Origin: Lepidodermella squamata
Taxonomy: Eukaryota > Animalia > Gastrotricha
Reading direction: 5' to 3'
DNA: 64,000 bases
NCBI GenBank assembly: GCA_047495785.1
Contig: JBLDXI010000049.1
Location: 62,001-126,000, forward strand
Position 1 is the stretch's first letter. Each line of letters opens with the position of its first letter. A program made the translations under genes and the position numbers. The notes below the pieces were generated by a model. The model searched no databases. It was not told where the DNA came from and worked only from the letters and a program-made list of their open reading frames with translations. Below, one piece after another: positions 18,157-55,083 of the stretch.

Positions 18157-19268
18157 GAGGATGATATACTGAGCGGTTCCGCGCCGTCGGCAAGAACCAG
18201 GATGGCTTGGGTTGATTCTGTCAAGATGTCATGAACTTGTAATCACACAATGACAGTCATATTCAAAGATTATTATTGTAAACCAGCGCTTTCTCTCAGG
18301 GCCTGAAATCTGTGAGTGATCTGCGGTTGAAACGTCTTAATTACTCTCCTGACTGCCCAAGTTGACAACACATACATTTATTCCTGTATCAACCAATAAA
18401 ATTATTTCCAGGCCAATTGATGATACTGTGGTCCGAAGATGCTCTTTATTTGCTTTGCCGTTTGATTATGGGCTTGAACATCGATCGTACTTGGGTTGTA
18501 CCTTGGCTCGCCACAAAAGCTAAAGATACAAGAACGATATGAGGCCTAGGAGAGGATAACCTCTGCCTCAAGAAATCCTTAAATGCGTGATCCCTCAAAT
18601 CAATGTTTCGATTGGTTCAAGGCTTTTTTGGACATTTGTCATAATTCTCCTATACTGTGGTCACCTTTAGTATTACTCACAGTTTGGAACTAAGGCAATT
18701 CTACTGGAAAACTGAAAGTTTTAAGGTTCAGGCGGATACTCTGAGCGTCTTCGATCTGAATGTAGACATTTTTGCTGTCTAATTTTCAAAAATTATGTGA
18801 AATTTTTCCAAGGAATGGACACCTACTCACCATTTCTTACAATTTCTAATTTTTTGTTCCGCTGTTGTGCTCGCTCTAACGAAAATATGTCGCCGGAAAT
18901 GGGTTAGTTTACATACTACAATTAGGCATACAATTACCACCCTATCAATCGTAAAAACACCCGATTCATGAAAATACTGAATTAAGATGTAGCGAATGGC
19001 GTATGATGTCACCTTTTTGACAAAATAATACTGGAAGTTGTGAAAATTCAACGACTCAATGAAATAAGCCCTACTTTTTATATCCCTAATCAAATCAATC
19101 TGATTGATAGCTGCAGACATTCCCCGGAAAATTGCCACCCCCAATTATCGTCGGTCGCACACTTTTATCATATCGATTTTTCCAACGCATGCTAACACGG
19201 AAACACTATACACGCCTTATTTAAGTGAAATGCAGACAAGCATATATAATCCTATCTAGTTTTTGAAA

Positions 19269-20572
19269 ATGATGAAGGCTATATTCTGCAAGGTAGGACA
19301 GGCTTTTGTCTTAACCCCGATTTTATGTACTGTTTTTTGCATTAAGGTGTGCCAAGAGCCGGTCCCGCGACGCAAAAGATTCCACCCTTCAATTTGCGAG
19401 GCTTGCCGCAAATTTTTCAGCCGAACTTGCCAACGCGGGATTGACTGCCTGAAATGCACGTCTGAGAACTCGCCCGGGCAGTGCCATGACTTCAAAAAGC
19501 GAAACTACTGCCCGAAATGCCGCTTCGAGCGATGTTTATCCGCGGGTATGCAATGCAAGCATTTGAAGAGTCAGGGAAGTTTTTCAAGCGTGGAGGCCGC
19601 TTCACCGAAAGAAGGAAATTCAAACGGCTCGCCAATGTCGAAAACGCTGCTGGAAGAAGGCGCTGAAAACAAAATGTCACCGCCAAGTGAAGACGGAGCA
19701 GCTTTTAATTTAAAGGCAATGTCAGCAATGCTCACGCAGCCAACCCTTTTCGACGGCGATATGATAGAGGATCTCGTTCGTAACTCAATCAGCGCATTCA
19801 CTTATCTCCATAATCTTGAATTCGTGAGGATTGCTAGTTTATAAAACCATGCCGTGATTTTTCCTTTGTTTTAGCTTGTTTTGAAACGGAACCCGAAACC
19901 TTTAGCTGATTTGGAAGCTTTTCGTGAAATGTCGGCTCTACACGCTCATGGAATGATAGCTGTTGTTAATGAGTATGGACAACAATTCAAGGACGATTAT
20001 GGCTTTTTGCCAGAACATCACGTTATGGCTCTCAGTACAGCTTCGTTTGCAGCGATAAATACTGTTTTCCCTTCAACGGCCGGATCTCAGGCGTCAGCTT
20101 TCATCGGCTTGAGCGAGGAGTCTCGCGCTAAGGTCCTAGAGTGGTTCCCTGAGTTTCGAATCACGGATGATTTATGCCATCAACTGGCTCATTTGTTTTC
20201 AATTTGGAAGCCATCGTTACCGGAATGCTGCATTTTTATGGCAGTTTTGTACTTTACAGGTTATTTTCTTGAAAAATAGCCTAATTTTGCCTAATCTTCG
20301 ACTTTTGCGTAGGGAGAACGGGCAGCGATCGTTTTGAGCGGTTCTGTGACAGGCTCAAGCTGGCATTTAGCCTGTATACGTCCACGATGACAAGCGGAAA
20401 TCTTGCGCTGATTGATCAGCGTTGGCGTTATTTTAGCTTGGCGCTGCAGTTGGCGAGACAGGTGGCACTGCAGACGCAACAAGGTGTGACACAGCTGTCG
20501 CGGGAGACTCCGATATTCGCTCAAATTAAACGGATTCTCAATCAGGACCTTGAATGCGAGGAGGGTGTCTGA
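19269..20572 (+). CDS. Divergent nuclear receptor NR-b
   Basis: MMKAIFCK|VCQEPVPRRKRFHPSICEACRKFFSR...CPKCRFERCLSAGM (intron 19293-19346), then QPTLFDGDMIEDLVRNSI and WKPSLPECCIFMAVLYF. Confidence 0.85.
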
Positions 20573-21344: not shown

Positions 21345-24052
21345 ATGGCTTCTGATCCCGAAAATCTCATAACTGCTGTCAAAGTTGGCCTTTTGAGGCG
21401 GACGATCGACAAAGTTAAACTTTTCCCTCGTTTGCAAATTGCCGCATTAAAAAGGTTTATTTGGCATTTTCATCAGTTTTCTTTGAATTTTCTCCTGTTT
21501 AGAGCCTCGCTCGATGCCGCGAAGAGACTTCACAAATGGCCGCAAGAAGTTGCTATCAATATTCACCGGTTTGAGGAAAAATTGAGGAATTTTATTCATG
21601 TCAACAAATTTGCTAACAGATTCGTATTCGAAGCGACTTTGGATCAAGATACTCCTATTTACTACTACTGGCTAGTTGCTACATCAATCGCATTCTGCTA
21701 CAACCTTATTTTCACCCCACTTCGAGCGTCATTTGTTGATTTCAACATGGATCACATAAAAATTGTTTGTTTTCACGGCTGTGAACTGCTTCTATTCATA
21801 AATTATTTTAATTTCAGTGGCTGCCGATTGATTACGCTTGCGACGCTGTTTACCTCATCGACATGCTCTTGCGATCGAGAAAGCGCTACTATCAACAAGG
21901 CTTACAAGTCTATGACTTGAAGCTACTGCGGAGACGGTATTTTCGAAGTTGGGAGTTCGTTATCGACGTAATTAGCATTCTACCAACCGATCTCATCTAC
22001 ATCCCATTCGGGCTTGAATACGTCATCTGTAGGATGAACCGGCTCTTCAAAGTCAGTCGTTTTTCTGAAATGAACGATCGTGTCGAGTCAACAGCTGCTT
22101 TTCCCAACGCCTTTAGATTCTGGTTAGAGACGGTTGAAAAGCTTAAAGTTGAAAGCATTGTCCTTCGATTTATTTTGAAGGAACACAGTATTCTACACTC
22201 TGATATGCATCCTCTATTCGACGGTCTTTTATCACTCATATTCCAAGGCGTTAGGCTGGGGCAAATCACCTGAAGACTTTCCACTAGCGAAGGAATATTC
22301 TGAACTCCCATTCTACAACCGGTATTGAAATGCATTCAAATAATATGGCATGAATCATATTATTGTTTTATGTATCAGCTTTGTGAAATGTCTCTTTTGG
22401 GGAGCGATGATGATCACTTTCATTGGCGAACAGCCGATGCCTCAAACCCCTGTTCAATACATCATCGAAGTGCTCATCTACATTCTTGGTCTATCTCTTT
22501 TCGGATTTATTGGTAAGGCAGAACGTAGATGAGTAGCAGTTAATTAATTGCCTGGTGCTTAGTCGGCAGAATTGGCGAAATAATTGATAATTTGAGCGTT
22601 AACGAAGACGCATTCAACCGCCAGCTGGACGATGTTCGTGATTACATGCAAAATTCACATGTTCCAAAAGATTGTTACACAAAGGTATGGCAATTAACTC
22701 ATAATTAATATATTATTTTTTTTACGAATTTCATTCCCGAAGGTCGTGAATTGGTTTTGCTATGCCTATGAAAACAACGTTCTTGGAACTGCTAACAAGG
22801 CCCTGAAACCACTTCCAGATCGTTTGAAAGCTGGTGAGTTAGCCTGAAATCCCACCATTAAGATGATATGCTGTCTTTATCGCAGAAATCGCAAAGGACT
22901 TGCACCTTGAATCATTGAAAAAAGTTGCTCTCTTCGCCGACTTGGATAACACTCTTCTAATTGAGCTGGTGGGCCGCCTTAAACTTCAAGTCTTCAGCCC
23001 ACAAGATTACGTCTGCAAGAAAGGTAAAGAGTCTAGTAAATCCACTGAAGGATTTACTATTCTTTGCTTTTTACAGGCGACATTGGGAAGGAGATGTACA
23101 TAGTGAAATTAGGATCTCTCGAGGTTGTTTCAGATGACGGGAAGAAGGTTTTTGTAACCCTCGGGCAAGGCGTTGTGTTCGGCGAGATCAGCCTGCTGAG
23201 CATTCCTGGGAGCAGGACAGGAAATAGACGAACGGCCAATGTTCGAAGCAAAGGTGAGGTCATTCAATTCATCCGATCTTCTTCTAATTTTTCTCATGAA
23301 GGGTACTCAAATTTGTTTTCTTTATCGAAAGAGGACCTATACGACGTACTTGAGGATTATCCAGGTGCAATGCAAAAACTGGTTGATAAGGGTAAACAAG
23401 TTCCTCAGTTACTGATAGCCTTGAGATAATCCGGATGATAGGTACTGAGATTCTTCGAAAGGAAAATAAGCTGGACGAAGAGGCTATTGTGAGGAAAGAC
23501 GCGGAGGAGGCGGCATTTAAAGCTCTCGTCGACCGGCTGACCAAATCGATTGAAAGGACGGAGGATTCTATTGCTTATCTGACTGCGACGATGCGATACA
23601 ATCGCGAAATGGCTTATAAGAGAGTTGAAAGGCTCGAGATTTTAATGAAAAAGAGATCGCTACTTCCAAGTGACGAGAGCGAAGAGGCTGGACCCTCAAT
23701 TCAAGATGAAATGAGTGACGAAACTCGAGACAAAGCGCCAGAAGAACCTCTCGCTGAGAATCCCACAGTGGAGCAAGATATAATCGTCGAAAAGCAGGAT
23801 GAAGATGAAAAAGACCAGGCGAAAGAAGTTGCTGTAGATACCGAACCTAGTAAGAGGAAAAAAGTGAGATTTGTTGACGAGGTTCCAATGGGAGAATTTG
23901 TAGAGACGCCAAATGTTCCGACGCCTGATACTCCCAAGACTCCGAATCTGCCATCTTCTGAATGTTCGACTTCACCTTCTATTCCTTCACCAGGGCCTAG
24001 TGTTTCACCTCCAGTCTACAATTTGCCACGAAAGTGGGATAAACTGAATTGA
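21345..24052 (+). CDS. Cyclic-nucleotide-gated channel alpha-like subunit 1
   Basis: S1 YYYWL..YN..PLRASF, S3 [11 protein letters not shown]4 [10 protein letters not shown], pore [16 protein letters not shown]-linker, [48 protein letters not shown], coiled coil, acidic/Pro-rich tail. Confidence 0.92.
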
Positions 24053-38611: not shown

Positions 38612-40640
38612 TTAGAAACCAAACTCAGTTACAGACTCCGAAGGCTTTGCTGAGACATACAACAAAATTGGAGTGAGCAGTGAAGCCAGCGCATAGATCC
38701 ACAAATTGACGCGTTCGATAACTTCGGCAATAAACAGCCATTGCTCTTCGATTGTGGCCGCTTTCTGGTTTTCTTGTCGATTCGGAGGGCTGTTGACTCC
38801 ACATTGCAAATCAGACATTTCCGCAGCATCGCAACTGCTTGCTCCAACTGAAGACGATCGAGTGCCCTTCAGACGCCGTCTTCTTCCTTGAACTTTAAAC
38901 TTGATGAATTGACATTTGCCGAAAATCTTCGCTGCTCCGAGGAGCCAAGCATGCGGTCGAGTCTGGAATCAACTTTTTTACCGAACTTGGTTGATAAGTC
39001 AGCTCATACTCACCTTGTTTGCCTTGGACTTTTTCAAGGCCCAGAGAACAATGCCGTGACCTAGAATTGCGATTATTGCGATGTAAATCATTTGAAGGTG
39101 GATGTATAGGGAAAGCATTGGCACTTCTCGAGACGATTTTGGGACCTCGCTCAAAATCATGTTCTGAAACAAAAATCAAAAACATTTATCCAGAAGCATC
39201 AAACTTGTGAGGTTCACCTGGAAAAACAGATAGGCCAGAAAACACGAAACCGAAATGCCCACTTTCCCTGTCTGTTCCACCTAGAAAAACGAGAATGATT
39301 CTCACAATCAAAGTTTTGCCAATGTCATCGCTTACCGGGATTAGGAAAACAACCAGTTGAACTGCAGCGATTGTAACACTAGGGATGATTATGTTGACCT
39401 TGTAGAACAGAGTTTTGCGGCAGAGCAGCAGGGAGAAGATGACCTTTTCATAGGTTATGCCGCTAGCTGCCGAATACTTTTCGGCAACAACTTCCGTACG
39501 GTTTGCTGCAACGTGCCACAGGTCGTTTTCAGTCCATAGATTGTCAACCCTTGCGAACGGATTATTCAGTAAGATGAGCTCCTGCATTGTGGCCGGATAG
39601 TTCCAACTTTCAAGAACGAATTGGCAAATCTGTGACATTATAAGGGAAAAATCGAGGGTGGCCAAATGTTAGATTGATTCTCTCACCTGGTAATCGAAAG
39701 GGAAAGTTGCCAACTTGATGTTGCATTGGTCTTGGATGATTCCTTTTGGATACAGTTCGATTTGGCCGCTACTTTTAAGAAGGGCTTTCGATTTTTCACC
39801 CAAGATGCCACCGCCACTAAAGCCACGTTGTAATTTATAACTATCCAAGTTTGAAAATTAAGCAATAATTTTACTTTTCGCCGGATGCGCCGGTTGTCCA
39901 AGCCAAGTCGGGTAGCCAAAGCTTGTCCGTAGCAACCAGCAGCCGGTGGGCACATTTAAAAGGAAAAGTGTTGTCCCACTGCAGATAATCGTTAGTCCAA
40001 ACCTTGACACGTATGAATATGAATTTCCAGGTAAAACTTGTGAGAAAAATTCTAAATTGCCCCAATTTCATTTCGATTTTTTTCAATTTTAATCTCGTAA
40101 AAATTCGATGAAAATGGGACAATTTGAGAAATTGTATAAAAATCTCTAGAATGATATAAACTTGCAAACTTACTATTGATAAGTATCCATCGATTTGAAC
40201 AGAACCTTGTCTTTCATCCTGAACCAAAAGACTCATGAATTAACGTGACGGTTAGGAACGTTTCTCGAACCAATTTTCGTAGGCTGAGCATTTTAAGCCG
40301 AACTCCGACGACAACCGGCTCTGTCAAATTTTTTCTTGGCCGCATTTTCGAATTCGGATAGTTGTTGAAAACATGCGCGTAGACTTCGTCTTCGGATATC
40401 ACTGTGGATCAGGTGAATTCGTGAATTAGGAAAATTATCGTAATATCCGAGTCTTACTCGTTGATAAGCACGTTTGGTTCATGCTTTCGGTGCGGTTGTT
40501 AGCCATAAACTCAGCGGCTCCACCTGTTTGAGAGGAAAATAGTTCGTGTAAAAACGTTGACCCATTCAATCCAAGTAGTATCACCGCTCACCGCTTAAAA
40601 GCATGGAAAGAAAACAGTGCAAGAGAGAACTGATTAACAT
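38612..40640 (-). CDS. Cys-loop ligand-gated ion channel, non-alpha nAChR-like subunit (multi-exon)
   Basis: Signal peptide; RPRKNLTEPVVV; WTNDYLQW; LWLPD; Cys-loop CNIKLATFPFDYQ|IC; RKTLFYKVNIIIPS; M2 EQTGKVGISVSCFLAYLFFQ; M4 QWLFIAEVIERV. No vicinal Cys in loop C. Confidence 0.9.
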
Positions 40641-42367: not shown

Positions 42368-45300
42368 ATGGCGAAAATTCAACTCGCCCTCTTGTTTTTT
42401 ATTCTCAGCTTTCACTTCGCAGCAGGTAAATTTACCAATAAATTATACGCGTATTCATTACTTTTTTAATTTTTTAGGCGAGGAGTTCTCGAGTTACTGC
42501 ACCGATCATGGCCACGGTCAAAAGTTGATGACATCTTTATCCCTAAAAACAACCAACCACGGCCAGCTATTCAGCCACGATCCTCGCAATTTCACCGATT
42601 CGAAGCCATTCAAGCGTATCAAATGTGCATGGCGGCTGCTTTTCGACGATTTCATCAGCGAACTCGATGATCTTATCGCAGCTCCGAGGTCGAACGACTT
42701 ACTCGCCGAGCAGGACGCGATACAACGGTCTCAAAGGCCTAAACCCCGTTTCCGAATGGGAACCGATGGCGACGATAGCCAATCGCTGCGGCTTGAATTT
42801 CACGATTTCGACATTGCCGAGACGAAATTCGATCAAAACGACCTGGACGAGCGGAAAGTTGTTGATGATTCAGGGCGGCGATGTGAGCGTAACTGGGTCA
42901 AAATTTCCTACATTGACGGTCACGCGAATAAGCAAGAATTAGGCCAATTTTGCGGTAAGGTTTCAATACCGAATTTCTACGGCGAACCTGGCCGATCGGT
43001 TATTATCGAAGTTGAAATAAATGACGCGCCGGCTAAGCCGTTTCGCATCGATTTTCACACCGGCCGGGCGTTGGAATCGCATAACAAGCAGTGTTCCATG
43101 TCGTATTTCGCGTGTGAGAATTTTCATGACCTACTTCAACCAGGCGGGTCAAGGTGCATTCCCGACTCGTACAAATGCGACACGTTCGGCGACTGTCCGA
43201 CGCGAGATGACGAGCGCGGCTGTGTTAAAGACAAGCCAAAGCCGGAGGAAATGCCGCTGGAGGCTGGTGATATGGCTCCGATTGAGCGCGAAATTATCGA
43301 TTCTGGTTGTGGCTCGCCGCGCTATCAAACTGGGTCAAGTGGTGCGTTCGGGTCGAAAAATTACCCGAAAAAATACGACAATAATGTGCGATGTGTCTGG
43401 TACATTATGTCACCTCCTGATACGGTAATTAACTGTCTACTCGTGAATCAAATTTTATTCGGGTCTTAATTTTAGCGGAACCAAATTTGAATGTAGCGGA
43501 ACCAAATTTGCCTGTTAGCGGAACCAAATTTAGGAATTTTCGAAGAGCCTAAAGCCACTTTTTGAAGCTTTCAAGCTTGTCATGATCTATCAGCATAATT
43601 TGAAATAAATCATCATTAAATTCAGCGTAAAATTCTGTAAAAGACGCATTCTTCACTATACGATTCATGCATTGCCTCAATTTCGTAGAAAAATTCAAAA
43701 AGTCACCTTTCGCTTACCTAAAATTTGGTTCCGAAAAATGCCGATTTGGTTCCGCTTTTTGTTTATTAAAAATGTCATTTTCAAAATTATCAATTAATGG
43801 ATTTATGAAAATTTAATGAATTTGGATTTTTTTTTAATTTTTTAAAATTTAAAATAAAAAAACTCTAGAATTAGAATTCAAATTTAAATTTGGGTCCCCT
43901 ACAAAGTAGGGAAAATTTAGTAAAAGGCTTCAAAACAAAAGCTTCAAAGCACCATGACCTCAAAGCAAAATAAAAAAATTGCTTCAGAGTAAAATAATAA
44001 CATTAATTCCAAAACATGCTGATCATTGCGAAATACTTTATTTTACTTTTTTAATGGGAGTGCTTTGAAGCCATTTGGTCTGGAGAGCGCACCATTTGTT
44101 GCGTCATAATTTCTTTGAAGCCTTTTACTTCGTAGGGGACCCTTAAATTTAATTGAAAAATAATCAAATTTTTCACGATGAATTTTGATAATTTTTAGAA
44201 AATCTTGATCACCTTCAATCAAACTTTCGGCATCGAGCCATCTGAAACGCAGGGTGACTGTTCATTTGATGCGCTCAATTTCTACCCTCGCGGGGTCGAC
44301 TCAATGAAATTCGGCCAACGAGTGTGCGGAAAATCGACGCCGAAATCACTGATAATCGGCTCGTCATGGGTTATGGTTGTCTTCGAAACCGACTCATCAA
44401 CAACTATGGACGGCTTCTTCCTAAAATGGAAGTCAATAACGGCGCTTGAGGAATCTACCTTAACCGGGTCAACGAATTTGAAACCACCCGTTCCAACCCC
44501 GCCGGCTAATAGCGAAGATTCCTGCACAACTTCCACCGGAATTTCACTGAAAGACCACTCTGGCTTCATCCAATCACCAGCCTATACCATGTCCCCAACC
44601 TACCCGTCCACCTTAATGTGCCGTTGGCAGCTGTTGCCAGCTCCAAAGGCGAAGGATGATAGTTACAATTTGACGCGAATCGAATTTCGATTTCTCGATT
44701 TTTCGGTCCAAGCTTCGAAAGAATGCGCCGCTGATTTTCTGATGATTAAATACCAAGATTTGGACAACAAGCCGCAATGGGTCAGGTTTTGCAACGGCGC
44801 CAATGAACCGCCGTTCGAAGAGGCCTTCGTCATTAACACGCGAAATGGCGCCGAAATCATTTTTCGCGCCGATTCTTGGATTGAAGATCGCGGTTTTGAA
44901 TTTTCGTACAAAGCCGTATTTGCGGAGGATGAAAAATTGCCGGCACTAATTATTGGCCACGATGATGAGGTGCTTTCGCCCACGTGCGGTTTGGCGCCTA
45001 ACGCCCTGGCGCCGGCTTCTCCCGTGTTTTCTGGGTCATCGCCTTTCCTAATTGGAGGGTCCACTATTGTTGAGGTAGGTACATTTTTATTATAAATTTT
45101 AGAAATTTTTTGAAGTCCGCCTGATTTTTAGAACGGCGTTTTCCCTTGGATGGTTCACTTGATGTTTCAAAAGCAACACCGATGTGCCGGAACAATTATC
45201 AGCGACAGTGAGTTTTTGAAGTCCCATTTCGATTTTCCTTAATAGTTTGGATTATTTTAGAATGGATCCTGGCTTCGGCTCATTGTTTTCAAAATGAGTA

Positions 45301-46051
45301 CCGTAATGTTAAGCTATGGGAAGTTTCGATCCCAAGCGGCTCTGCTGCGGTCGCTGGCCCTCCAATCTCCAACATTTACGCTCACGTTGAGTTTGGGAAA
45401 GTGCCCGGAAATTCGAAAGAATTCGACATTGCTCTGATCAAGCTTGCAACTCCGGTAAAACTTGATTATTTTCCGTATTAAATTTGTAGGATTTTAAGAA
45501 CAATGTTAAAAGGTCAAAAATAATTCGAAAATAATTATTGATAATTTTAAGCTGGATTTTTTAACAAATTAACAATTAATAAGATCAATTTTGATGGGCA
45601 AACTGGAGCTATTTGTTTGCCATCTCGCGACGTTCGCCGCTATGATCGATGCTACACAATCGGCTGGCACGAATCGAAATCAGGCCGGAAGGACAAACTG
45701 CGCCAAATTCACGTGCCAATCGTGTCCCAAGAAAAGTGCCGCAATCGCCATGTCATGTATGAAGCCCTTGTGACAAAAAACATGTTCTGCGCTGGCTATG
45801 AAATTGGATCTAACCAATTGTGCCACGGTACTAGAGAAAATCATATATCAAATTATTTAATTTTCAATTATTTTTCCGCAGCAATGCTCGACTCTGGAAG
45901 CCCGCTCGCTTGCCAAGTCGGAGCTAAATGGGAACTACATGGACTGTTATCATTCGGTAAAGGATGTGCAGGATCCCGGGCCCCTGATGTCTACACCCGA
46001 ATCTGGGCTCTCTCGGAATGGATTCAAAAAGTCATCGCAAAATTTGCCTGA
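42368..46051 (+). CDS. Secreted modular S1A serine protease: SP-CUB-LDLa-CUB-CUB-trypsin domain
   Basis: Signal exon MAKIQLALLFFILSFHFAAG; CUB motifs (CAWRL, FCGK; NYPKKYDNNVRCVW; YPSTLMCRW); LDLa CIPDSYKCDTFGDCPTRDDERGC; protease LIGG, FPWMV, ASAHC, DIALIKL, DSGSPL, PDVYTRI. Confidence 0.9.
43473..43756. repeat. MITE-like element with sub-terminal repeats
   Basis: Three direct tagcggaaccaaattt copies and two inverted atttggttccg copies. Confidence 0.55.
43892..44142. mobile_element. MITE in a protease intron
   Basis: TIRs gggtcccctacaaag / cttcgtaggggaccc, with internal inverted aaaaggcttcaaa motifs. Confidence 0.65.
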
Positions 46052-47180: not shown

Positions 47181-49543
47181 TTAGTAACGAGCCATTTCTT
47201 CCATTGGTATCGCGTCGACGTTGCTACCGGCCGGGGCGCCACTAGCGTCTGATGCGTTCCGTTTCTTAGCCAGGGTCAGTTTATCGACGATTTCTCTGGC
47301 TGGCACGCCAACTGTTTCGGGCAGGAACATGTACAGCAGGAAAAGTTCGATAAGGCAGATGAGAGACATTATCACAATCTCAGATTCACGAATGCTCTGG
47401 AATGAATTGAAAATTGTAAATTATCTAAAAATATAGGTCATTTGCTGACCCCTAAAAAAGTGGTGCATGTGCGCGCGTGCCAATTCGCATTTTTAAGAAA
47501 CGTTGAGCTGCGCGTTGACAAAGGGTTACTTTCAAATATTAAGGCGGTTTTCATGCCTTAATAAACCCCAAGCAATCCTCCGTCAAGGAATGTAAAAACC
47601 GCCTTAATATTTGAAAGTAACCCTTTGACAACGCGCAGCTCAAAGTTTCCTAAAAATTCGAATTGGCACGCGCGCACCTGCCCCACTTTTTTAGGGATCA
47701 TGCCCTCTTTATTCGCACTTGCATATAATTTTATTATTGGGTCTGTGAATTTTCGAATAATTCGAGAAAAATAAGAAGTTGGAAGAAATCAGCTCACCTC
47801 TTCGTCGAAAATTTGCCTCGCCAACATTTGGATGGCCAAGTCACCAATAGAGGCCAGCACTATTGAGAAGCTGTTAGCCGCTATACGGTATGCCGGAGCA
47901 AACATTTCGGCAATCATGAAAGCTGAAATCGGAGCCGGGCCAACTGAGTTGGAAATTGCGTAGGAAAAGTGCCCGGCTACTACGGCGGCGAAATTTTGGT
48001 AGTGAAGGCCGATTGCGAGAACGAAGAAAGAAATGGCCATTGAAGCTAGGCCGCCGATCATTAAAGGTCGCCGGCCGATTCGATCGACGAAAAATAGGTT
48101 GATTACCAGACCGATGACGAGAAACACCACTCGGCCAGAAACAAGCCCTAAAGAGTAAAACAATTCTCAACATTTCAGTTTGAAATTTTTTAGACAATAT
48201 TTCATGTTTTTAATTTAATTTTTTTTGTTTAAATTTTTTTTAAATTTCAGTTTGTTTTCTAAATTTTTTGTAATTTCAGCTCTGACTAATGGAATTCTTG
48301 GAATTTTACCTAAGGAATTAATTCCTAATTGCGGCTGCGAGACCGTGAATCCGGTAATATTCCGGTAAGATTCGCCCCGGAAAATTTCGCCAACGTAAAA
48401 GCCAGTTGTGATGAGGTGGACCAAGGCCACGCTGATCGAAATGAAAAGAGGCAGGCCGAATTCGCCGCAGTGGTTGCACATGCACACGAATAGGTTGAAT
48501 TTCTGGCCGCGTTTCGATTTTTCGTACTCCTCGGCTTCTTTTTTCAGCTCGTCAAGCTCCTTTTCGCGGCGGCCGAGTTGTTGTAGGGCTTCTTCGGCTT
48601 TTACGAAGAGCTGTTTATGAACGAGCCAGCGTGGATTGTCGGCGCTGAAGAAGTATAGTAGGACGGCTTGAACGGCATGCGTCAGGATCGCGAAAACTGA
48701 AAAATTAAATTAAATTAATTTTTTCAATTAATTTTGAAAAAACTTAAATGAAATTTAAATTTTAACTTTCAAGTTGAAATTGAAAATTTTTATTTTGATT
48801 CGATATTTTGTAAAATTTTAAATTTAAATTTAAATTACTGTTCAAAAAATGCCATAGGATGATTGGATAGTCGACTAGTATAGCATAGGATAGGGTTGCT
48901 ACAGCGAATCCGAGGGCGAAAAACACGCCTTGAAGGCTGGCACATGTCCCTCGAAGACTCTTCGGGGCGATTTCGACGAGTATCGCAGGGGTAATTAGAA
49001 GCTCACACGCTGCAAAAAAATCGGAAAAAATTATGAAATTTACGTGAAAACATCACTCACCATGAATCATGCCAATAAGAGGGCAAGACGCTGGCCATAA
49101 AAACATTCCAGGCATGTCAGTATCTCGTTCGAAGGTCAGTAAGTAGCTCAAGAACAGCATCACACAGGCATGAGCCCCTTCAACAAAAGCCATAGCAACC
49201 CTGAACAATTTCGATAAAAATTCGATTTTTTTTAACCGAAATGATCTAACCTGTCCGAAATGCGGTCACGCTGCGTGTTCCTCAGAAACATTGATATCAG
49301 GATCATGATTCCTATGCCGACTCCGTAAAAGCTGAAAGCTAGAGGGAATTCTTTTCGATGATATGCCGATAATTCAGGGGCTATTCTCGCGATGCAGCTC
49401 CATTGCAAGAAATAGCAGCAAATCGTGATTTGGCCCATAGCAACGGCCACGCTTGATATCACCAATTTCGGCGTCCATCGCTCGTTCGTACCCGGTGACT
49501 CATCTTCGATTAGCAACGGCGGCGATGGCCGTCTTCGAAACAT
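47181..49543 (-). CDS. MFS sugar porter (GLUT/SLC2-like), divergent
   Basis: ILVEIAPKSLRGTCASLQGVFFALG, DNPRWL, VDRIGRRPL, GPAPISAFMIAEMF..YRIAA, FLPETVG. Confidence 0.85.
47446..47700. mobile_element. Near-perfect long palindrome (MITE) in a transporter intron
   Basis: Arms of about 110 bp, tgacccctaaaaaagtgg...aaggcggtttt, inverted against aaaaccgcctt...ccacttttttagggatca. Confidence 0.8.
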
Positions 49544-49882
49544 TGACAATAAGCCGGCTATGATACAGCAGATACGTATAAGTACTTTGCAGAAGTTTAA
49601 ATTGGTGAAAATGAAGTAAATTCAATTGTCAGTTTTGCGACATGAGTCGCCAGGTGTTTCGTGTTCACTTCACATAACCAGCCGCTTGTGCAAATAGCGG
49701 AAACAACGCGCCAGATGCTAACATTCAGACCTCTGCTCTTCTTTTTTCTCGAAATTTTGAATAACGTTTTGAGTAAAATGTAAAATTTATTGTTTTTCAG
49801 GAATATAATTTTCTGCAAATTTTCGAAAAATAAAAAAACCGATAGACAACCGACGCGATATTCCCAAATTTCTAGCTCCCTA

Positions 49883-50062
49883 CAGGGCGGCCAAAAAATT
49901 CCGCAGAAGGCGAATTCGATGCGCATCATTTTATTGAGGAGTTTCGAGAAATTGAGGAGTTCCATTGGCGAAAGAATGCTTGAAATTCTTCAGCTTCTTA
50001 AAACTCCTCATTAAATTGATGCGCATCGAATTCGCCGTCTGCGGAATTTTTCGGCCACCCTG
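49883..50062. mobile_element. Tc1/mariner-type MITE
   Basis: TA|CAGGGCGGCC...GGCCACCCTG|TA with long inverted arms. Confidence 0.8.
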
Positions 50063-50071
50063 TACACCCTA

Positions 50072-50247
50072 CAGAGTGGCCGCAAAAAGTCGCAGATGGG
50101 GCAGAATTGTTGCGCATAGATTTAATGATGAGTTTTGAAAGTTTCAAAAAACTTCACTCTTCAATTTCTTCAATTTCAATTACTTCTCATTAAATTGATG
50201 CGCAAAAAATTTCCGCCCCATCTGCGGCTTTTATTGCGGCCACCCTG
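50072..50247. mobile_element. Second, related Tc1/mariner-type MITE, immediately adjacent
   Basis: TA|CAGAGTGGCCGCAA...TTGCGGCCACCCTG. Shares ctcattaaattgatgcgca with the previous copy. Confidence 0.75.
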
Positions 50248-51136
50248 TGTAATTTTGGCTGTTCAGAGCTCGAAATATTTGTTGATACCGTAGTTACCGA
50301 ACTACGGTATTTGTTGAGTTTATCCTCTGACGCATCGGTGAATTTTGAATCCGAAAACCGACGCTGTATCATAGCAACGGCTGCCAATTTGCGAAATCAT
50401 CTCCAAAGATGACGACGAACACTCAACAAATCCACTTTTGTGAGGTTTATTGAGCCATTTTTTCTGACTCCACATTCAACAGAAGTAATTAAGTTTCAAT
50501 AGCGAGGATATAAACTGCGCGCACGGTTGAAACCTGAGCTGAAGCAAAACAATAATATTTCATTATTTTTAGCTCTGGGTTCGCATGAAACAAAAATAGA
50601 AAGTATAACTCGGACATATAAGGCAAGGGAATTGTTGCTGGTCAAAAGAAATACATAAACATTTTTATTAAACGGTAATTTATTGGGTAAAAAGTTTAAT
50701 TTTCACTTTTCCAAAGTGTTGCCATTTCTCTTCAAAGTCATCCAATTTTCCTCAAAATCTCTCCTCAAGTGTTCAACGTGAACGTGAAGAAATCATTTTT
50801 GACGCATAGTTTTCTCTCGGTATATACGATTGACGCCATGAAAAATTCTCGCAAACGTTTCGAGCAATTTGGCAAACAGACTTTTTCAGTGAAGGAAATG
50901 AAAACGAAAAGATGCATAGTTTATTTGCAATATTTTTCAAAATAAATTTTTCGGAAGCGGCAAATGAGAATTTAAGCTATAACCACGCATTTAATTAAAA
51001 AATTGTCAATCGCAAATGCAATAATTGCCCAGAGCTCAAGGAAAAATAAACAAAATAGTTTTAATATCTGCGCTGCTCGAATCATTGGAATGCTATCAAA
51101 ACCAAGACAATTTTGTTTGAAAGCATCATCAGAATA

Positions 51137-52715
51137 ATGCTAACTTCACTAACTCTACCTTTGCCTCTGATAGTAATTCTAACAATCACGCGTAAGTTTC
51201 CACTGCCGAATTAATCAGTGTCAGCAATTTCAGCAATTAATAGCTTCTGTGATTCCGGTTGATTGTCCTCCGTATGAGTATGAAGATCCACTCGCAGAGG
51301 TTCCCCTGCCAACTGCTGACTATAGTCAAAGAATTTATGAAGACCTAAGTCTAACAAAATTCACTTGCTTGTCTGCGGATCAATCTGTTTATAAGGCACT
51401 TGGCGTTGTTTCTGGCCTAAATGCTCCCGATTTAGTCCTGGGATCGGGCGATGGAAAGGCGGGTGCTATCTATTTCCTAGAGGCGGTATTGTTGAAAGTT
51501 ATAAAATGTCCTTATTTCGTTACTAAACTTAACATTAACAGCTCGCAAGCCACAAAATTTGGCGCGTGGAGTTGTCTGTATCGCTTACATATACGATAAA
51601 TGCGGAAGACACAGCGGGTAATTTTACTTGGATTTTCATGATTTGACCCTTATATCGCGCTCACCAAGGCGCCTTTTTCACTTTGTTCTTTCTCAACAAG
51701 GCCGCTATGAAAGAGCCTTGTGATGGAAGCAATATCTGCATTGACAACATGAACATGCAAGGCTATGCAGTGATCTTGAAACCGCATCACGGATTTACCT
51801 ATCAATACGGTGTTTACAAGGGAATGGGGTCAAGCCTAACAACAGATGAATCGGATACTACTCGGGTACCTGGTTGCCCAGCTCCCTCCCATGCCGGTCA
51901 GGATCCATACATCGACGTATTGTTAGTTCTTCAAAAAGATGGCGAAGAAAACATCACGAAAGTATAAAAGCATTCGAATTTTCGGCTATTTTGAAAACAT
52001 ATGTATTAAGTTATATGTTGCGGCAAATGGTGCCAGCTTAGATGGAAATAATATATGCAGCCAGTTGGCGACTGAGGAGAACAAAGATGATGGTAGTGGG
52101 ATACAGAAGCTCATAGACATTCCAAATTTGGTGATGGGCATGGCGACGTCGAAATTCACAAAGGCGGTAATCCAGTATGTCAAATTCTATGATTTGACGC
52201 CGCCAGATCCGCCCGATACAACAACTTCAACAGCCCTGACTGACTCAACGTCAACAGAATCTGCTACGACCTCAACTAGAAAGGTATCAACAACTAAAAC
52301 AGCACAGACTTATTCAACTTCAACCGTATCTGCTTCAACGACAACCAGCAAGCCATTGACATCTCCAGCCAAGACAAAACAGAGTATGAACTCAAGGGAC
52401 TGCTCGTCCTGAAAAAGGGATTACAAATTTCGATTTATTTCAGCAACAATAGCTTCGACTGATTCACCGTCGACCGAATCTGCTTCGACGTCGTTGAATG
52501 TAGAGTCAACAACTCAAACAAGTGGAACTTCAAGCAGTACGGTTGCGCTTCAATGGGTTTGAGTTATTTCGTGAACTTTGATTTAAACTAGAATCTATGT
52601 ATGACATAGCCTTCAACGGACGCGGCAACTGTTACTTCAAGTGGAGCAGGTTTCACGCAACAAATGGCTTCAAGTGATACTGCATCAGTGACTGACGCCA
52701 CGTCATCCTCATCAG
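51137..52715 (+). CDS. Signal peptide + L-type-lectin/ConA-like beta-sandwich + Ser/Thr mucin stalk (5' part of a probable chimeric channel gene)
   Basis: Exons 51137-51191, 51244-51485, 51542-51617, 51669-51961, 52011-52383, 52444-52556, 52610-52687/52715. Motifs GAIYF..WRVELSV..GAFFTLFF..GYAVIL..LYVA..C..LVMGMATS..IQYVKFYDL, followed by more than 120 aa rich in S/T. Confidence 0.7.
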
Positions 52716-53078
52716 GTGCGTTTTGTCCTTATGACTGCCCCTTACAACCCTAGAGTTCCGATTAGGCTCAGCCGAAGGAGTGGCAGATGACATTATCCCT
52801 GCCAAAATCTTGAAAACGTAAGAGAGACCCCTTTGCTCTTTCGAAAATTTCCAAATTTCCGGACTTCTGACTTCTGAGGGGTAAGAGGCTCCTCCTTAGC
52901 CGAGAGGGATCCCTGTACAACCTACTTGAAAACTTCACACTTCCTGAGTTCGGATGGTAGAAAGGATATGGGATTTGCTGCACGGAAATTTCGGGATTTG
53001 GGATTTGCTGCTGTGATTTAAAAATCCGAATTTTGTAGAGTTAGGAAGGTAGATGTGACTTTCACCGTGAATTAACAG

Positions 53079-54341
53079 AATGATGTGACTTCCTTTGAAA
53101 AAGGCGTTCCATCTTGGGCCTCTCCTACAACAACAACTGCGATTGGCGAGCCATCTCTGCTTCCCCAGAAAGTATTGTCGGGCGACGGTAATTTGGTGGG
53201 ATCTCCTAATCTGTCAATTGAAAACTTGATTCCGCCTTTTCCGGCCGGGAAATCGTTCCCCAAAATCACCGCAGCATTGCTTCTGGAGCTATGCCAAGAT
53301 GTATCGCCGAATCAAACAGCCCCGAGAAATTTCGAAGGTTCGGCAGTACCTATCAACATTGCGATAGCCTTCGACAAGTTGCTGCAGTTTGATAGCCGAG
53401 ATGGCAAAATCACAATGCTAACTTCCATGTTACTGCGTTGGAACATTTCGACTTGTACTCTGATTCTTGGAAATGACACAATAATTGACCAGGGAGGCGT
53501 GGAGGGCGTGTTCATTCCCGATCCAAATGAGCTCTGGATGCCCAACTACTTCTTCACCACCAGTTCTGACGATCTGTTCATGAAAAATGATGAAAATTTC
53601 GACTTGGATCTCCTTGGCGTAGTCAGTAAACTTACGCCTGTTTCATCTAAATCCAATCCACTGATTAGCTTCTACTTCATTCGAAGCGGCATTTTCTCCG
53701 CTGATTGCGACCTGGACCTAGCTAAATTCCCTTTCGACGGCCAAACCTGTGGATATTCCTTTGCTATTGAACGATCGATACAATTGCTGAATTTCAACGC
53801 AATCGACCTATTCTGTTCGAACAAGCAGTTCACGGAGTGGAATTTCGAGAAATGCTCCTGGGAAATGAAGCCGGATCGAATTAGTGGCGCCGACGTTCAA
53901 ACAGTGAAATTCAACGTATCAGTAACTCGTAGGTATGGGTTCTACGTTTTCAGTACAATGCTACCGAACACTTGCCTATCCCTTCTAATTTTGGCTACGT
54001 TTGTAATGCCACCGGATGAGCCAGATAGGCCTATGTTTTGCGTCACGATCCTGCTCGCTTTAGCTCTTGCGATGTCTGGCGTGCTTGATAACATTCCTCG
54101 GACATCGCAAAGGATTCTGTTATCTGACTACGTTTTGTTCATGACTATGGTTGCTGCGGGGGTCACGCTGTATGAACTGGTCGCTTGCTTCCTAGGCAGT
54201 AGCGAAAGTGAAACGGCTTTCTGCTCGAAAAGCTGGAAAGGCGTTTCTTACCTGCGACTTCTCGATTTGGCGTTTTTCGGAATTACTCTGCTGTCAATGA
54301 TTGCAATCTATGGATATGCATATTCCATCCTCGTTGGCTGA
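53079..54341 (+). CDS. Cys-loop ligand-gated ion channel in one intron-free exon (3' part of a probable chimeric gene)
   Basis: LWMPN; Cys-loop CDLDLAKFPFDGQTC; TEW; RRYGFYVFSTMLP; four TM helices; very short M3-M4 loop. It starts at an acceptor (aacag|, 53078) and has no ATG-initiated signal peptide. Confidence 0.9.
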   Translation, partial: NDVTSFEKGVPSWASPTTTTAIGEPSLLPQKVLSGDGNLVGSPNLSIENLIPPFPAGKSFPKITAALLLELCQDVSPNQTAPRNFEGSAVPINIAIAFDKLLQFDSRDGKITMLTSMLLRWNISTCTLILGNDTIIDQGGVEGVFIPDPNELWMPNYFFTTSSDDLFMKNDENFDLDLLGVVSKLTPVSSKSNPLISFYFIRSGIFSADCDLDLAKFPFDGQTCGYSFAIERSIQLLNFNAIDLFCSNKQFTEWNFEKCSWEMKPDRISGADVQTVKFNVSVTRRYGFYVFSTMLPNTCLSLLILATFVMPPDEPDRPMFCVTILLALALAMSGVLDNIPRTSQRILLSDYVLFMTMVAAGVTLYELVACFLGSSESETAFCSKSWKGVSYLRLLDLAFFGITLLSMIAIYGYAYSILVG

Positions 54342-55083
54342 ACCACACTTACGAAGTCCCGTAAAAGCGCATGACTGGAATAATTCCAGGACAAATCTGT
54401 GACCGGCAACATTTTAATTATTTAATCATAACCCATGATGCTTTAACATGTTGAGGGGGGTTCTATCTGCGATTACCACTTGGAGCAGGATTATTATTAT
54501 TATTGGTTTATTAGGACTTAAGAATGGAGGAGTAACATGTATTTTATTACTTAATTCGCTTAAACGTTCTGATTCATCAGTCATTACATCTATGTCTAAT
54601 GATTAAGGTCAATAAATTTTTCTATTCAACTACGGCAGTTTATGACGCTTCCGGCTCAATGCCTCTATTTATTCCTCGAATATTGATATAGCATTATATG
54701 TCCAAATTGACCTAGCAAAATTCGATGAGTGAGGAGGTGATACATACTAGCTCGGAAATTCAAGCGCTTTATTGAATGCTGGGCAAGAAAAAGGGCGCGA
54801 TCAATTGAAGCGCACAGTTACCGGGTGCAAATTGGCACGCGATTTGCTATTCCGAAAAGTTCGTGCTTTATCGATTTCCGATATAGGCACAAACATTTGT
54901 AAACACACCGCGTTGTACTTGAGCATTCTCAGAGCAGTAAACATTTTTTTGCGACCCTAAATATAACTCGGAAAAATTGTACAAGATGCCCACAGCTATT
55001 CGCAATTATCTGTGGTCAATGTCCCCCGGATTTTTCGCTGAAAATGCTTAATGAATTTTCTTTCTCAAAAGTCGCATGCAGCA

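What the first reader, a model, noticed from the sequence alone, without database searches (positions are those of the whole stretch)
51137..54341. Candidate lectin-mucin-stalk Cys-loop channel chimera (a tethered or glycan-sensing ionotropic receptor?)
Seen: the 1.26-kb channel exon has an in-frame TAA just upstream (53073-53075), begins at an acceptor (53078), has no signal peptide, and opens with SPTTTTA, continuing the S/T-rich exons 360 bp upstream. Those upstream exons supply a signal peptide but no TM helix, and there is no AATAAA in 52716-53078. Established: animal pentameric channels normally carry only a signal peptide before the ligand-binding domain. The motif order of the N-terminal domain (GAIY..WRVE..G..GYAV..C..G-M-A-T..V-K-F-Y-D-L) recalls ERGIC-53/VIP36 L-type lectins. 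Inference: a pentamer presenting five lectin-like heads on mucin stalks, for contact chemosensing, mechanical tethering or localisation. Caveat: the best donor (52715, phase 1) does not match the phase-0 acceptor. It needs the donor at 52687 (CA|GTGACT) or an 8-nt microexon at 53041-53048.
Basis: partly seen in the sequence, partly recalled or inferred. Interest (0 to 1): 0.88.

Follow-up and report, generated by a model that had tools for sequence, protein, structure and literature searches.

The report
Lectin-stalk exons before an ion-channel exon
An animal gene appears to join a lectin-like head and a sugar-coated stalk to a nicotinic-type ion-channel subunit; unbroken genes of related animals prove this unreported design exists, but the splice that joins the parts at this locus has not been seen.

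Summary
Window 53079-54341 is one intronless exon for a complete Cys-loop channel subunit. It has no ATG and no signal peptide, and it follows an in-frame TAA and an acceptor. Its first 30 residues are a disordered Ser/Thr/Pro linker. Upstream on the same strand lie a signal-peptide exon, four lectin-like exons and three Ser/Thr-rich exons.

The proposed design is real in the family. Relatives from metagenomes encode a signal peptide, one to three ConA-like domains, a Ser/Thr linker and the channel in single uninterrupted ORFs.

The join at this locus is not shown, because the only RNA-like run is too sparse. Two relatives have a phase-1 intron at the same place. A rival join also exists: the signal-peptide exon's GTAAGT donor to 53103 gives a plain channel, as in the nearest relatives.

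The L-type-lectin fold of the window's own domain could not be tested with the allowed inputs. The evidence for it is indirect.

The scan's first readers noted the same design at 10 or more other places in this genome. I found no paper that describes it. Probability of a fused transcript here: about 0.65.

The parts
51137..51172 (+). Exon 1: ATG and the hydrophobic signal-peptide start (MLTSLTLPLPLI). The phase-0 donor GTAATT at 51173 reads into exon 2. A second donor, GTAAGT at 51192 (phase 1), would extend the exon to 51191 (…VILTIT).
   Evidence: It is the only signal-peptide-like ATG exon on this strand next to the gene (the scan of 49600-51240 gave one other hit, at 49715, ~1.4 kb upstream).
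51234..51485 (+). Exon 2: N-terminal strands of the lectin-like domain (…GDGKAGAIYFLEA). It has no ATG of its own.
   Evidence: The second haplotype keeps the ORF, with 8 synonymous and 10 non-synonymous codon changes.
51542..51617 (+). Exon 3: LASHKIWRVELSVSLTYTINAEDTAG. The phase-0 intron before it lies 7 residues ahead of the conserved Trp, exactly as in the L002 gene.
51669..51961 (+). Exon 4: core of the lectin-like domain (AFFTLFF…MQGYAVILKP…YIDVLLVLQKDGEENITK).
   Evidence: Pieces of the RNA-like run X1 lie on it.
52011..52383 (+). Exon 5: end of the lectin-like domain (…LVMGMATSKFTKAVIQYVKFYDL, to about 52196), then the start of the Ser/Thr-rich stalk.
   Evidence: An X1 piece lies on it.
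52444..52556 (+). Exon 6: Ser/Thr-rich stalk. Its phase-0 donor at 52557 is also in frame with acceptor 53078.
52610..52715 (+). Exon 7: Ser/Thr-rich stalk. The donor CAG|GTGCGT follows 52715 (phase 1), and an alternative donor follows 52687 (phase 0). If unspliced, the exon reads on to a stop after …GAFCPYDCPLQP.
52716..53103 (+). Putative intron 7: 388 nt if the acceptor is the AG at 53102-53103, or 363 nt if it is the AG at 53077-53078. It has stops in all frames, no signal-peptide-like ATG ORF, no AATAAA or ATTAAA, and no repeat found elsewhere in the window.
53104..54341 (+). Channel exon (open from 53079). It encodes a disordered Ser/Thr/Pro linker, a pre-LBD helix with Cys, the beta-sandwich ligand-binding domain, M1-M4 with a 20-residue M3-M4 loop, and the TGA stop at 54339-54341.
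   Evidence: Pfam. AlphaFold2 gives pLDDT 89.5. Foldseek's best matches are alpha7 and muscle nAChR, TM 0.64. PDB sequence search.
53706..53750 (+). Cys-loop: CDLDLAKFPFDGQTC.
54024..54092 (+). M2 pore helix. Asp at -1' and Asp at 20' align with the nAChR Glu -1' and Glu 20'.
54611..54616 (+). First AATAAA after the channel stop codon.

Best explanation
One gene of eight coding exons (51137-54341, + strand) encodes an 828-residue subunit. In order it has a signal peptide, a ~260-residue lectin-like beta-rich head, a ~150-residue Ser/Thr-rich (probably O-glycosylated) stalk and a complete nicotinic-type pentameric channel subunit.

The stalk most likely joins the channel exon through a phase-1 intron: donor after 52715, acceptor AG at 53102-53103, giving …SSSS-G-VPSWASPTTTT….

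Five subunits would form a pore, probably cation-selective, with five heads on flexible stalks above the ligand-binding domains. Because the stalk is long and disordered, the head most likely anchors, localises or clusters the channel on a glycan or matrix partner, or captures a ligand. Direct allosteric gating by the head is less likely.

Shown: the exon anatomy, the complete channel fold, and the existence of this design as single ORFs in relatives. Inferred: the splice at this locus, the fold and binding activity of the head, ion selectivity, and the role of the head.
For: 1. The channel exon cannot stand alone. It has no ATG or signal peptide, an in-frame TAA and an acceptor lie just upstream, and residues 1-30 are a disordered Ser/Thr/Pro linker.
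2. No signal-peptide-like ATG exon exists in the 363-nt gap. Next to the gene on this strand the only one is exon 1. The next gene upstream is on the other strand.
3. Exons 1-7 form one open frame that ends at a donor, not a stop. The gap has no poly(A) signal; one follows the channel stop.
4. Donor 52715 and the AG at 53103 are both phase 1 and keep the frame. AAG acceptors occur at 2 of this gene's 6 confident introns.
5. Relatives have a phase-1 intron at the same place, just before the linker-plus-channel exon. In L009 it follows a signal-peptide-plus-LamG exon; in L005 it follows a signal-peptide mini-exon.
6. The design exists in uninterrupted ORFs: P0005, P0007, P0012, P0013 (Laminin_G_3, 6.4e-16) and P0020 with their own signal peptides, and P0002, P0004 and P0008 with L-type-like heads.
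7. The window's channel lies in a 12-row clade (support 100/99) in which most members carry such heads.
8. The window's head and the head of the L002 gene share motif order and a phase-0 intron at the same residue. hhalign gives P = 0.013.
9. The heads of P0002 and P0008 sit next to L-type lectin families in ESM feature space, at 0.85-0.94.
10. All nine fragments of the sparse RNA-like run X1 lie on exons of both parts, and none lies in an intron or flank.
11. Both parts look selected. Between haplotypes, exon 2 keeps its ORF and most listed changes in the channel are synonymous.
12. Asp at -1' and 20' of M2 align with the nAChR cation-selectivity glutamates.
Against: - No read spans any junction. 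X1 is sparse, may contain DNA, and leaves exon 7 and the first 280 nt of the channel exon uncovered.
- Intron 7 would be 363-388 nt, against 49-61 nt for the other six. Its donor GTGCGT differs from the GTA/GTT donors of the others.
- The two closest relatives, P0001 and P0003, are plain channels. P0001 lies in a syntenic locus with no lectin exons.
- Exon 1's consensus GTAAGT donor is in frame with the 53103 acceptor and gives a plain channel built like P0003's gene.
Confidence: 0.65

Rival explanations
1. One promoter makes two products. Exon 1, using its GTAAGT donor (phase 1, after 51191), splices straight to the AG at 53103. This gives a plain channel: signal peptide, short Ser/Thr linker, channel (MLTSLTLPLPLIVILTIT-R-VPSWASPTTTT…). 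Exons 2-7 are then used only in a separate secreted lectin-mucin product that ends at the stop after …GAFCPYDCPLQP, or they are skipped. Head and channel would never be in one polypeptide, or only in a minor isoform.
For: - This join is in frame.
- It copies the structure of the P0003 gene: a 19-residue signal-peptide mini-exon, a phase-1 intron, then the linker-plus-channel exon.
- GTAAGT is the best consensus donor in the region, yet it is useless for exon 2.
- The two nearest relatives and the syntenic locus L001 are plain channels.
Against: - It needs a 1.9-kb intron in a gene whose other introns are 49-61 nt.
- Exon 7 ends at a phase-1 donor that also fits 53103.
- There is no poly(A) signal after the read-through stop.
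- Three relatives carry this type of head fused to the channel in one exon.
Confidence: 0.22
2. These are two unrelated genes. A secreted lectin-mucin gene ends near 52750. The channel exon is a 5'-truncated pseudogene, or it takes a leader or exon from elsewhere, for example by trans-splicing.
For: - Intron 7 would be unusually long and its donor is atypical.
- The syntenic relative has the channel as an independent gene.
Against: - The channel ORF is intact over 420 codons and gives a confident complete fold.
- Most of the listed haplotype differences in it are synonymous.
- It has no usable ATG, so a leader alone would not supply a signal peptide.
- X1 pieces lie on it.
Confidence: 0.08

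Closest known systems
Cation-selective animal Cys-loop receptors (nicotinic acetylcholine and 5-HT3 receptor subunits)
   Same: - Same beta-sandwich ligand-binding domain with a C-x13-C Cys-loop and FPFD.
- Same four TM helices.
- M2 has Thr 6' and Leu 9', and acidic residues at -1' and 20'.
- Best PDB sequence matches reach E 5e-16, and best Foldseek matches reach TM 0.64 to alpha7 and muscle nAChR.
   Different: - Only 15-20% identity.
- The loop-B SWTYD segment, with the agonist-binding Trp, falls in a gap.
- There is no vicinal Cys pair in loop C.
- The M3-M4 loop is only about 20 residues.
- A family-specific pre-LBD helix carries a conserved Cys.
- It probably has an N-terminal head and stalk, which these receptors lack.
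Prokaryotic multidomain pentameric channels such as DeCLIC
   Same: A pentameric ligand-gated channel with an extra folded N-terminal extracellular domain. [quoted passage not shown]
   Different: - DeCLIC is bacterial. As far as I recall, its N-terminal domain packs on the ligand-binding domain and modulates gating with calcium.
- Here the organism is an animal, the head is ConA-like, and in this locus it hangs on a ~150-residue disordered Ser/Thr stalk.
L-type (legume-like) lectin domains: ERGIC-53, VIP36, legume lectins (Pfam PF03388, PF00139, PF18483)
   Same:
- The heads of relatives P0002 and P0008 have these families as nearest neighbours in ESM feature space, at 0.85-0.94.
   Different: - There is no Pfam or PDB sequence match for the window's exons or for the relatives' heads.
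- Sugar- and calcium-binding residues were not checked.
- Known L-type lectins are soluble or single-pass cargo receptors, not parts of channels.
Metagenomic relatives of this channel family (P0002, P0004, P0005, P0007, P0008, P0012, P0013, P0020; ENA assemblies, unnamed)
   Same: - Same channel subfamily, 25-35% identity, with the shared motifs C-D-H-F…APPNN and PKTSQRILLSDY.
- Same order of parts: head, Ser/Thr linker, channel.
- P0002, P0004 and P0008 have the same type of head as the window.
   Different: - In them, head, linker and channel lie in one exon. Most heads are Laminin_G_3-type, in one to three copies.
- In the window the parts lie on eight exons, and the last join is unproven.

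Membership tests
Pentameric ligand-gated ion channel (Cys-loop receptor) superfamily | Extracellular beta-sandwich ligand-binding domain (Pfam Neur_chan_LBD) | tested here: met
   PF02931 at E 1.5e-8, 34.8 bits against a cut-off of 26. AlphaFold2 pLDDT is 89.5, with strands E90-E284. Foldseek probability is 1.00 to nAChR, GlyR, GABA-A, GLIC and ELIC.
Pentameric ligand-gated ion channel (Cys-loop receptor) superfamily | Cys-loop: two Cys 13 residues apart with the F/Y-P-F-D core | tested here: met
   CDLDLAKFPFDGQTC at 53706-53750. Both Cys are invariant or nearly so in the 72-sequence alignment.
Pentameric ligand-gated ion channel (Cys-loop receptor) superfamily | Four transmembrane helices M1-M4, with M2 lining the pore | tested here: met
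   The model has helices at 287-309, 316-338, 347-374 and 391-419. PF02932 scores 27.1 bits, just under its 28.1 cut-off. M2 aligns to nAChR M2.
Pentameric ligand-gated ion channel (Cys-loop receptor) superfamily | Signal peptide that places the N-terminus outside the cell | tested here: inconclusive
   The channel exon has none. Exon 1 can supply one by several in-frame splice paths, but no junction read exists.
Pentameric ligand-gated ion channel (Cys-loop receptor) superfamily | Assembly into a pentamer and ligand-gated conductance | not testable with these tools
   This needs expression and recording.
Nicotinic/5-HT3-type agonist site | Loop-B Trp (SWTYD) that forms the cation-pi contact with the agonist | tested here: not met
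   In the HMMER alignments to alpha6 and alpha3, the segment 'wtyd' or 'wsyd' falls in a gap of the query. The agonist, if there is one, is not predictable from nAChR.
L-type (legume-like) lectin domain | Match to the family profiles (PF03388, PF00139, PF18483) | tested here: not met
   No Pfam hit for window exon pieces at E up to 10, nor for the heads of P0002, P0004 and P0008. A profile of the relatives' heads finds nothing in PDB sequences.
L-type (legume-like) lectin domain | ConA-like two-sheet beta-sandwich fold | not testable with these tools
   The window's head is spread over four exons, and no tool takes a spliced sequence by reference. AlphaFold2 on P0002:1-182 without an alignment failed, with pLDDT 30. 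The only leads are ESM neighbours of P0002 and P0008; window exon 4 alone gave nothing.
L-type (legume-like) lectin domain | Calcium- and sugar-binding Asp/Asn/His residues | not tested
   No reliable alignment to a solved L-type lectin could be made.
ConA-like lectin/glucanase superfamily, Laminin_G_3 type (heads of relatives) | Match to PF13385 | tested here: met
   P0013 matches at 6.4e-16 in three stretches. P0005 (1.4e-4), P0007 (1.9e-3), P0012 (2.4e-3) and P0004's second domain (0.026) give weaker hits. This applies to the relatives, not to the window's head.
Mucin-like stalk | Long Ser/Thr/Pro-rich segment of low complexity and without structure | tested here: met
   153 residues are 52% Ser/Thr. 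The part inside the channel exon has pLDDT under 50. O-glycosylation itself cannot be tested here.

The most novel reading that the evidence does not exclude
This would be a large, undescribed family of animal pentameric channels. Exon shuffling at a conserved phase-1 intron has placed ConA-like binding modules (L-type-lectin-like or LamG-like, one to three copies), often on mucin stalks, in front of the ligand-binding domain. The head would be the sensor: binding of a surface glycan, matrix component or microbe would gate, tether or mechanically load the channel. That would be an ionotropic contact or pattern-recognition receptor.
Probability: 0.2. Interest if true: 0.9.

Novelty: new variant of a known kind. 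Interest (0 to 1): 0.68.

Why it matters
Animal Cys-loop receptors are textbook examples of a fixed plan: signal peptide, ligand-binding domain, four helices. Extra N-terminal domains are known only from bacteria such as DeCLIC. A whole family of animal channels with lectin-like or LamG-like heads would add a new way to couple recognition of glycans or matrix to a fast ion channel.

The family would also be a clear case of exon shuffling onto a channel. Its members have short linkers, very short intracellular loops and mostly intronless genes, so they could be expressed and solved. For this locus alone the value is smaller. It is one member, and the only one seen here in which the fusion depends on an unverified splice. 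It may show how heads are gained or lost.

Tried and rejected
RNA evidence:
- Run X1 gave nine short paired fragments and no splice joint. Run X2 is DNA with two haplotypes.
- The second run search was not used, because no further read-laying was possible.

Homologue searches for the head:
- P0002 region 1-190 found only itself, and so did whole P0007.
- BLASTP of the window's head against all 160 fetched proteins found nothing.
- hhalign to the LamG set gave nothing.

Fold of the head:
- AlphaFold2 on P0002:1-182 failed.
- The ESM atlas on window exon 4 gave nothing.

Other searches:
- Two JGI metagenome scans found no close relatives, only distant pLGICs.
- A transposon as the cause of the long intron 7 was rejected: there is no repeat in the window.
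- The NCBI Mactra 'hypothetical proteins' with long N-termini are merged tandem channels, not fusions.
- Rfam found nothing in the window.
- Six literature searches and one paper (PMC4795631) gave no report of a eukaryotic lectin-pLGIC or LamG-pLGIC fusion.

Full report
**What is in the sequence**

The stretch 53079-54341 (+) is a single open exon of 420 codons.
- Pfam finds Neur_chan_LBD (1.5e-8) and Neur_chan_memb (6e-6, just under its cut-off).
- The Cys-loop CDLDLAKFPFDGQTC lies at 53706-53750.
- An AlphaFold2 model built with a 72-sequence alignment is confident: pLDDT 89.5, pTM 0.83. It shows a beta-sandwich, four TM helices and an M3-M4 loop of about 20 residues. Residues 1-30 (NDVTSFEKGVPSWASPTTTTAIGEPSLLPQ) are disordered.
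- Foldseek puts alpha7 and muscle nicotinic receptors first, at TM 0.64. PDB sequence search agrees, with a best E of 5e-16.
- In HMMER alignments to alpha6 and alpha3, Asp -1' and Asp 20' of M2 match the nAChR glutamates that confer cation selectivity. The loop-B SWTYD segment falls in a gap.
- So this is probably a cation channel, and its agonist cannot be read off from nAChR.

The exon has no ATG before residue ~110 and no signal peptide. An in-frame TAA (53073-75) and the acceptor TTAACAG (ending at 53078) precede it.

**The upstream exons**

Seven upstream exons on the same strand form one frame of 416 codons:
- E1 51137-51172
- E2 51234-51485
- E3 51542-51617
- E4 51669-51961
- E5 52011-52383
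- E6 52444-52556
- E7 52610-52715

They are joined by six GT..AG introns of 49-61 nt. They encode a hydrophobic signal peptide, a ~260-residue domain with six Cys, and a 153-residue stretch that is 52% Ser/Thr. There is no TM segment.

Two haplotypes in the DNA run X2 differ by about 10% in E2, yet both keep the ORF (8 synonymous and 10 non-synonymous codons). In the channel, 4 of the 6 listed codon changes are synonymous. Both parts therefore look like real coding sequence, and the head evolves faster.

The next gene upstream, a sugar-transporter-like gene at 47.8-49.5 kb, is on the other strand. E1 is thus the first exon after an intergenic region.

**Is the channel exon joined to them?**

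No read answers this. The one RNA-like run, X1, gave nine short paired fragments. All lie on exons of both parts, but none crosses a junction. E7 and the first 280 nt of the channel exon are uncovered.

What the sequence allows is listed.
The AG at 53102-53103 (…TTTGAAAAAG|GC) is a phase-1 acceptor and fits donor 52715 (CAG|GTGCGT, phase 1). The join reads …SSSS-G-VPSWASPTTTT…. AAG acceptors are used at two of this gene's six confident introns.
- Other in-frame joins are 52687 to 53079 and E6 (52556) to 53079.
- The gap 52716-53078 has stops in all frames and no signal-peptide-like ATG ORF. It has no AATAAA or ATTAAA, and no repeat that would mark a transposon. The first AATAAA after the channel stop is at 54611.

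The channel exon therefore needs an upstream exon, and the only source of a signal peptide is E1.

**A rival join**

E1 has two donors. GTAATT at 51173 (phase 0) is the only one that reads into E2. The better consensus donor, GTAAGT at 51192 (phase 1), hits a stop with every nearby acceptor. It is, however, in frame with the 53103 acceptor, giving MLTSLTLPLPLIVILTIT-R-VPSWASPTTTT…, a plain channel.

That is exactly how the gene of relative P0003 is built: a 19-residue signal-peptide mini-exon, a ~55-nt phase-1 intron, then a Ser/Thr linker and the channel in one exon (L005). Alternative splicing, or a separate secreted lectin-mucin product ending at …GAFCPYDCPLQP*, cannot be excluded.

**Relatives**

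The exhaustive HMMER search found 22 proteins under 1e-30. The 20 best hits that I looked up come only from ENA metagenome assemblies and carry no name, apart from two Mactra proteins. Their neighbouring genes (RIMBP2-like, Sushi, EGF, ankyrin) are animal genes.

Many are single uninterrupted ORFs with a head, a linker and the channel:
- P0005: signal peptide, LamG-like domain, long Thr-rich mucin, channel.
- P0007: signal peptide, LamG-like domain, short linker, channel.
- P0012 and P0020: two head domains.
- P0013: three Laminin_G_3 domains (Pfam 6.4e-16).
- P0002, P0004 and P0008: a different head, not recognised by Pfam.

I read P0002's DNA. Its gene (L002) has a signal-peptide-plus-head exon, one intron, and then the rest of the head, a Ser/Thr linker and the channel in one exon. 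The gene of P0006 (L009) has a signal-peptide-plus-LamG exon, a 58-nt phase-1 intron, and then the linker-plus-channel exon.

So the design is real. A phase-1 intron just before the linker-plus-channel exon recurs, which fits exon shuffling and fits the 52715-53103 join.

On a tree, the window's channel is sister to P0001 (support 100/98). It lies in a well-supported six-row clade with P0003 and the fused P0004, P0005 and P0013, and inside a 12-row clade (100/99) that is mostly fused.

P0001 and P0003 are plain channels. P0001's contig, L001, is syntenic with the window. The same sugar-transporter gene (67% identity) lies upstream on the other strand, but there the channel has its own signal peptide, and the gene before it is another plain channel. 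Heads have therefore been gained or lost among close relatives, and the window's state cannot be inferred from its neighbours.

**Is the head an L-type lectin?**

For the window's own head this could not be tested. The domain is split over four exons, no tool takes a spliced protein by reference, and I did not type it in.

Indirect evidence:
- The ESM atlas places the heads of P0002 and P0008 next to Lectin_legB, Lectin_leg-like, Lectin_L-type_dom and VIP36-like clusters, at 0.85-0.94. BLAST sees no similarity between those two heads.
- The window's head shares motif order with P0002's head: GA[IV][YW], WRxE, G-x-hydrophobic run, QG[YL]AV.
- It also shares a phase-0 intron exactly seven residues before the Trp of WRxE.
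- hhalign gives P = 0.013 over 72 columns.

Negative results:
- There is no Pfam or PDB sequence match.
- AlphaFold2 on P0002:1-182 without an alignment failed.

I therefore call the head 'L-type-lectin-like, unproven'. Nothing here bears on sugar binding.

**How it most likely works**

My best reading, at about 0.65, is one 828-residue subunit: signal peptide, head, O-glycosylated stalk, channel. The N-terminus of a pLGIC ligand-binding domain sits at the top of the receptor (established from solved structures). Five heads would therefore stand on flexible stalks above the pentamer.

A 150-residue disordered stalk is a poor lever for allostery. Anchoring, localisation, clustering or ligand capture is more likely at this locus than gating by the head. 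In relatives with short linkers (P0007, P0013), modulation of the DeCLIC kind is conceivable. All of this is inference.

**Novelty**

Six full-text searches and a reading of the main pLGIC inventory paper (PMC4795631) found no eukaryotic pLGIC with a lectin or LamG head. [quoted passage not shown]

The scan's first readers noted the same design at 10 or more other places in this genome. Those notes are unchecked, but they agree with the metagenomic relatives.

I rate the family as a new variant of a known kind. This locus is one member of it, with an unverified last splice.

Noticed in passing
window 39100-39860 (-): A second, ordinary pentameric-channel gene fragment lies on the minus strand about 12 kb upstream. 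It is 20-29% identical to many pLGICs and does not belong to the head-bearing subfamily (ORF 39186-39665).
   Followed up: partly
window 47792-49549 (-) and L001:707-1733 (-): A sugar-transporter-like gene lies upstream on the opposite strand and is 67% identical to the one beside P0001 in the metagenome contig L001. The two loci are therefore syntenic. In L001 the space taken here by the lectin-stalk exons holds another plain channel gene.
   Followed up: yes
window 51173 and 51192: Exon 1 has two donors 19 nt apart. The weaker GTAATT (phase 0) is the only one that reads into exon 2. The consensus GTAAGT (phase 1) fits only the far acceptor at 53103. This could be a switch between head-bearing and plain isoforms.
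   Followed up: partly
window 51172-51467 and 51535-53185: DNA run X2 holds two haplotypes about 9-10% apart over exon 2 and about twice that in intron 1. From 51535 to 53185 only one haplotype lies on the window at 90% likeness, so the head's second half, the stalk and intron 7 are even more diverged or rearranged in the other copy.
   Followed up: partly
P0016, P0026, P0011, P0010 (metagenomic relatives): Other members of the channel family carry different N-terminal modules ahead of a Ser/Thr linker: a small Cys-containing domain, an unrecognised domain plus EGF, or only a signal peptide plus linker. The channel exon seems to accept many heads.
   Followed up: partly
P0030, P0031 (NCBI KAL4222471.1, KAL4219929.1, Mactra antiquata): These annotated 'hypothetical proteins' of 821 and 876 residues hold two ligand-binding and two membrane domains each. 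They are probably merged tandem channel genes, not head fusions.
   Followed up: yes
window 19263-19844, 23435-24052, 42525-46051 (+): Other genes in the window show that the source is an animal: a nuclear-receptor zinc finger, the C-terminal leucine zipper of a cyclic-nucleotide-gated channel, and a CUB/LDLa/trypsin-type protease.
   Followed up: no
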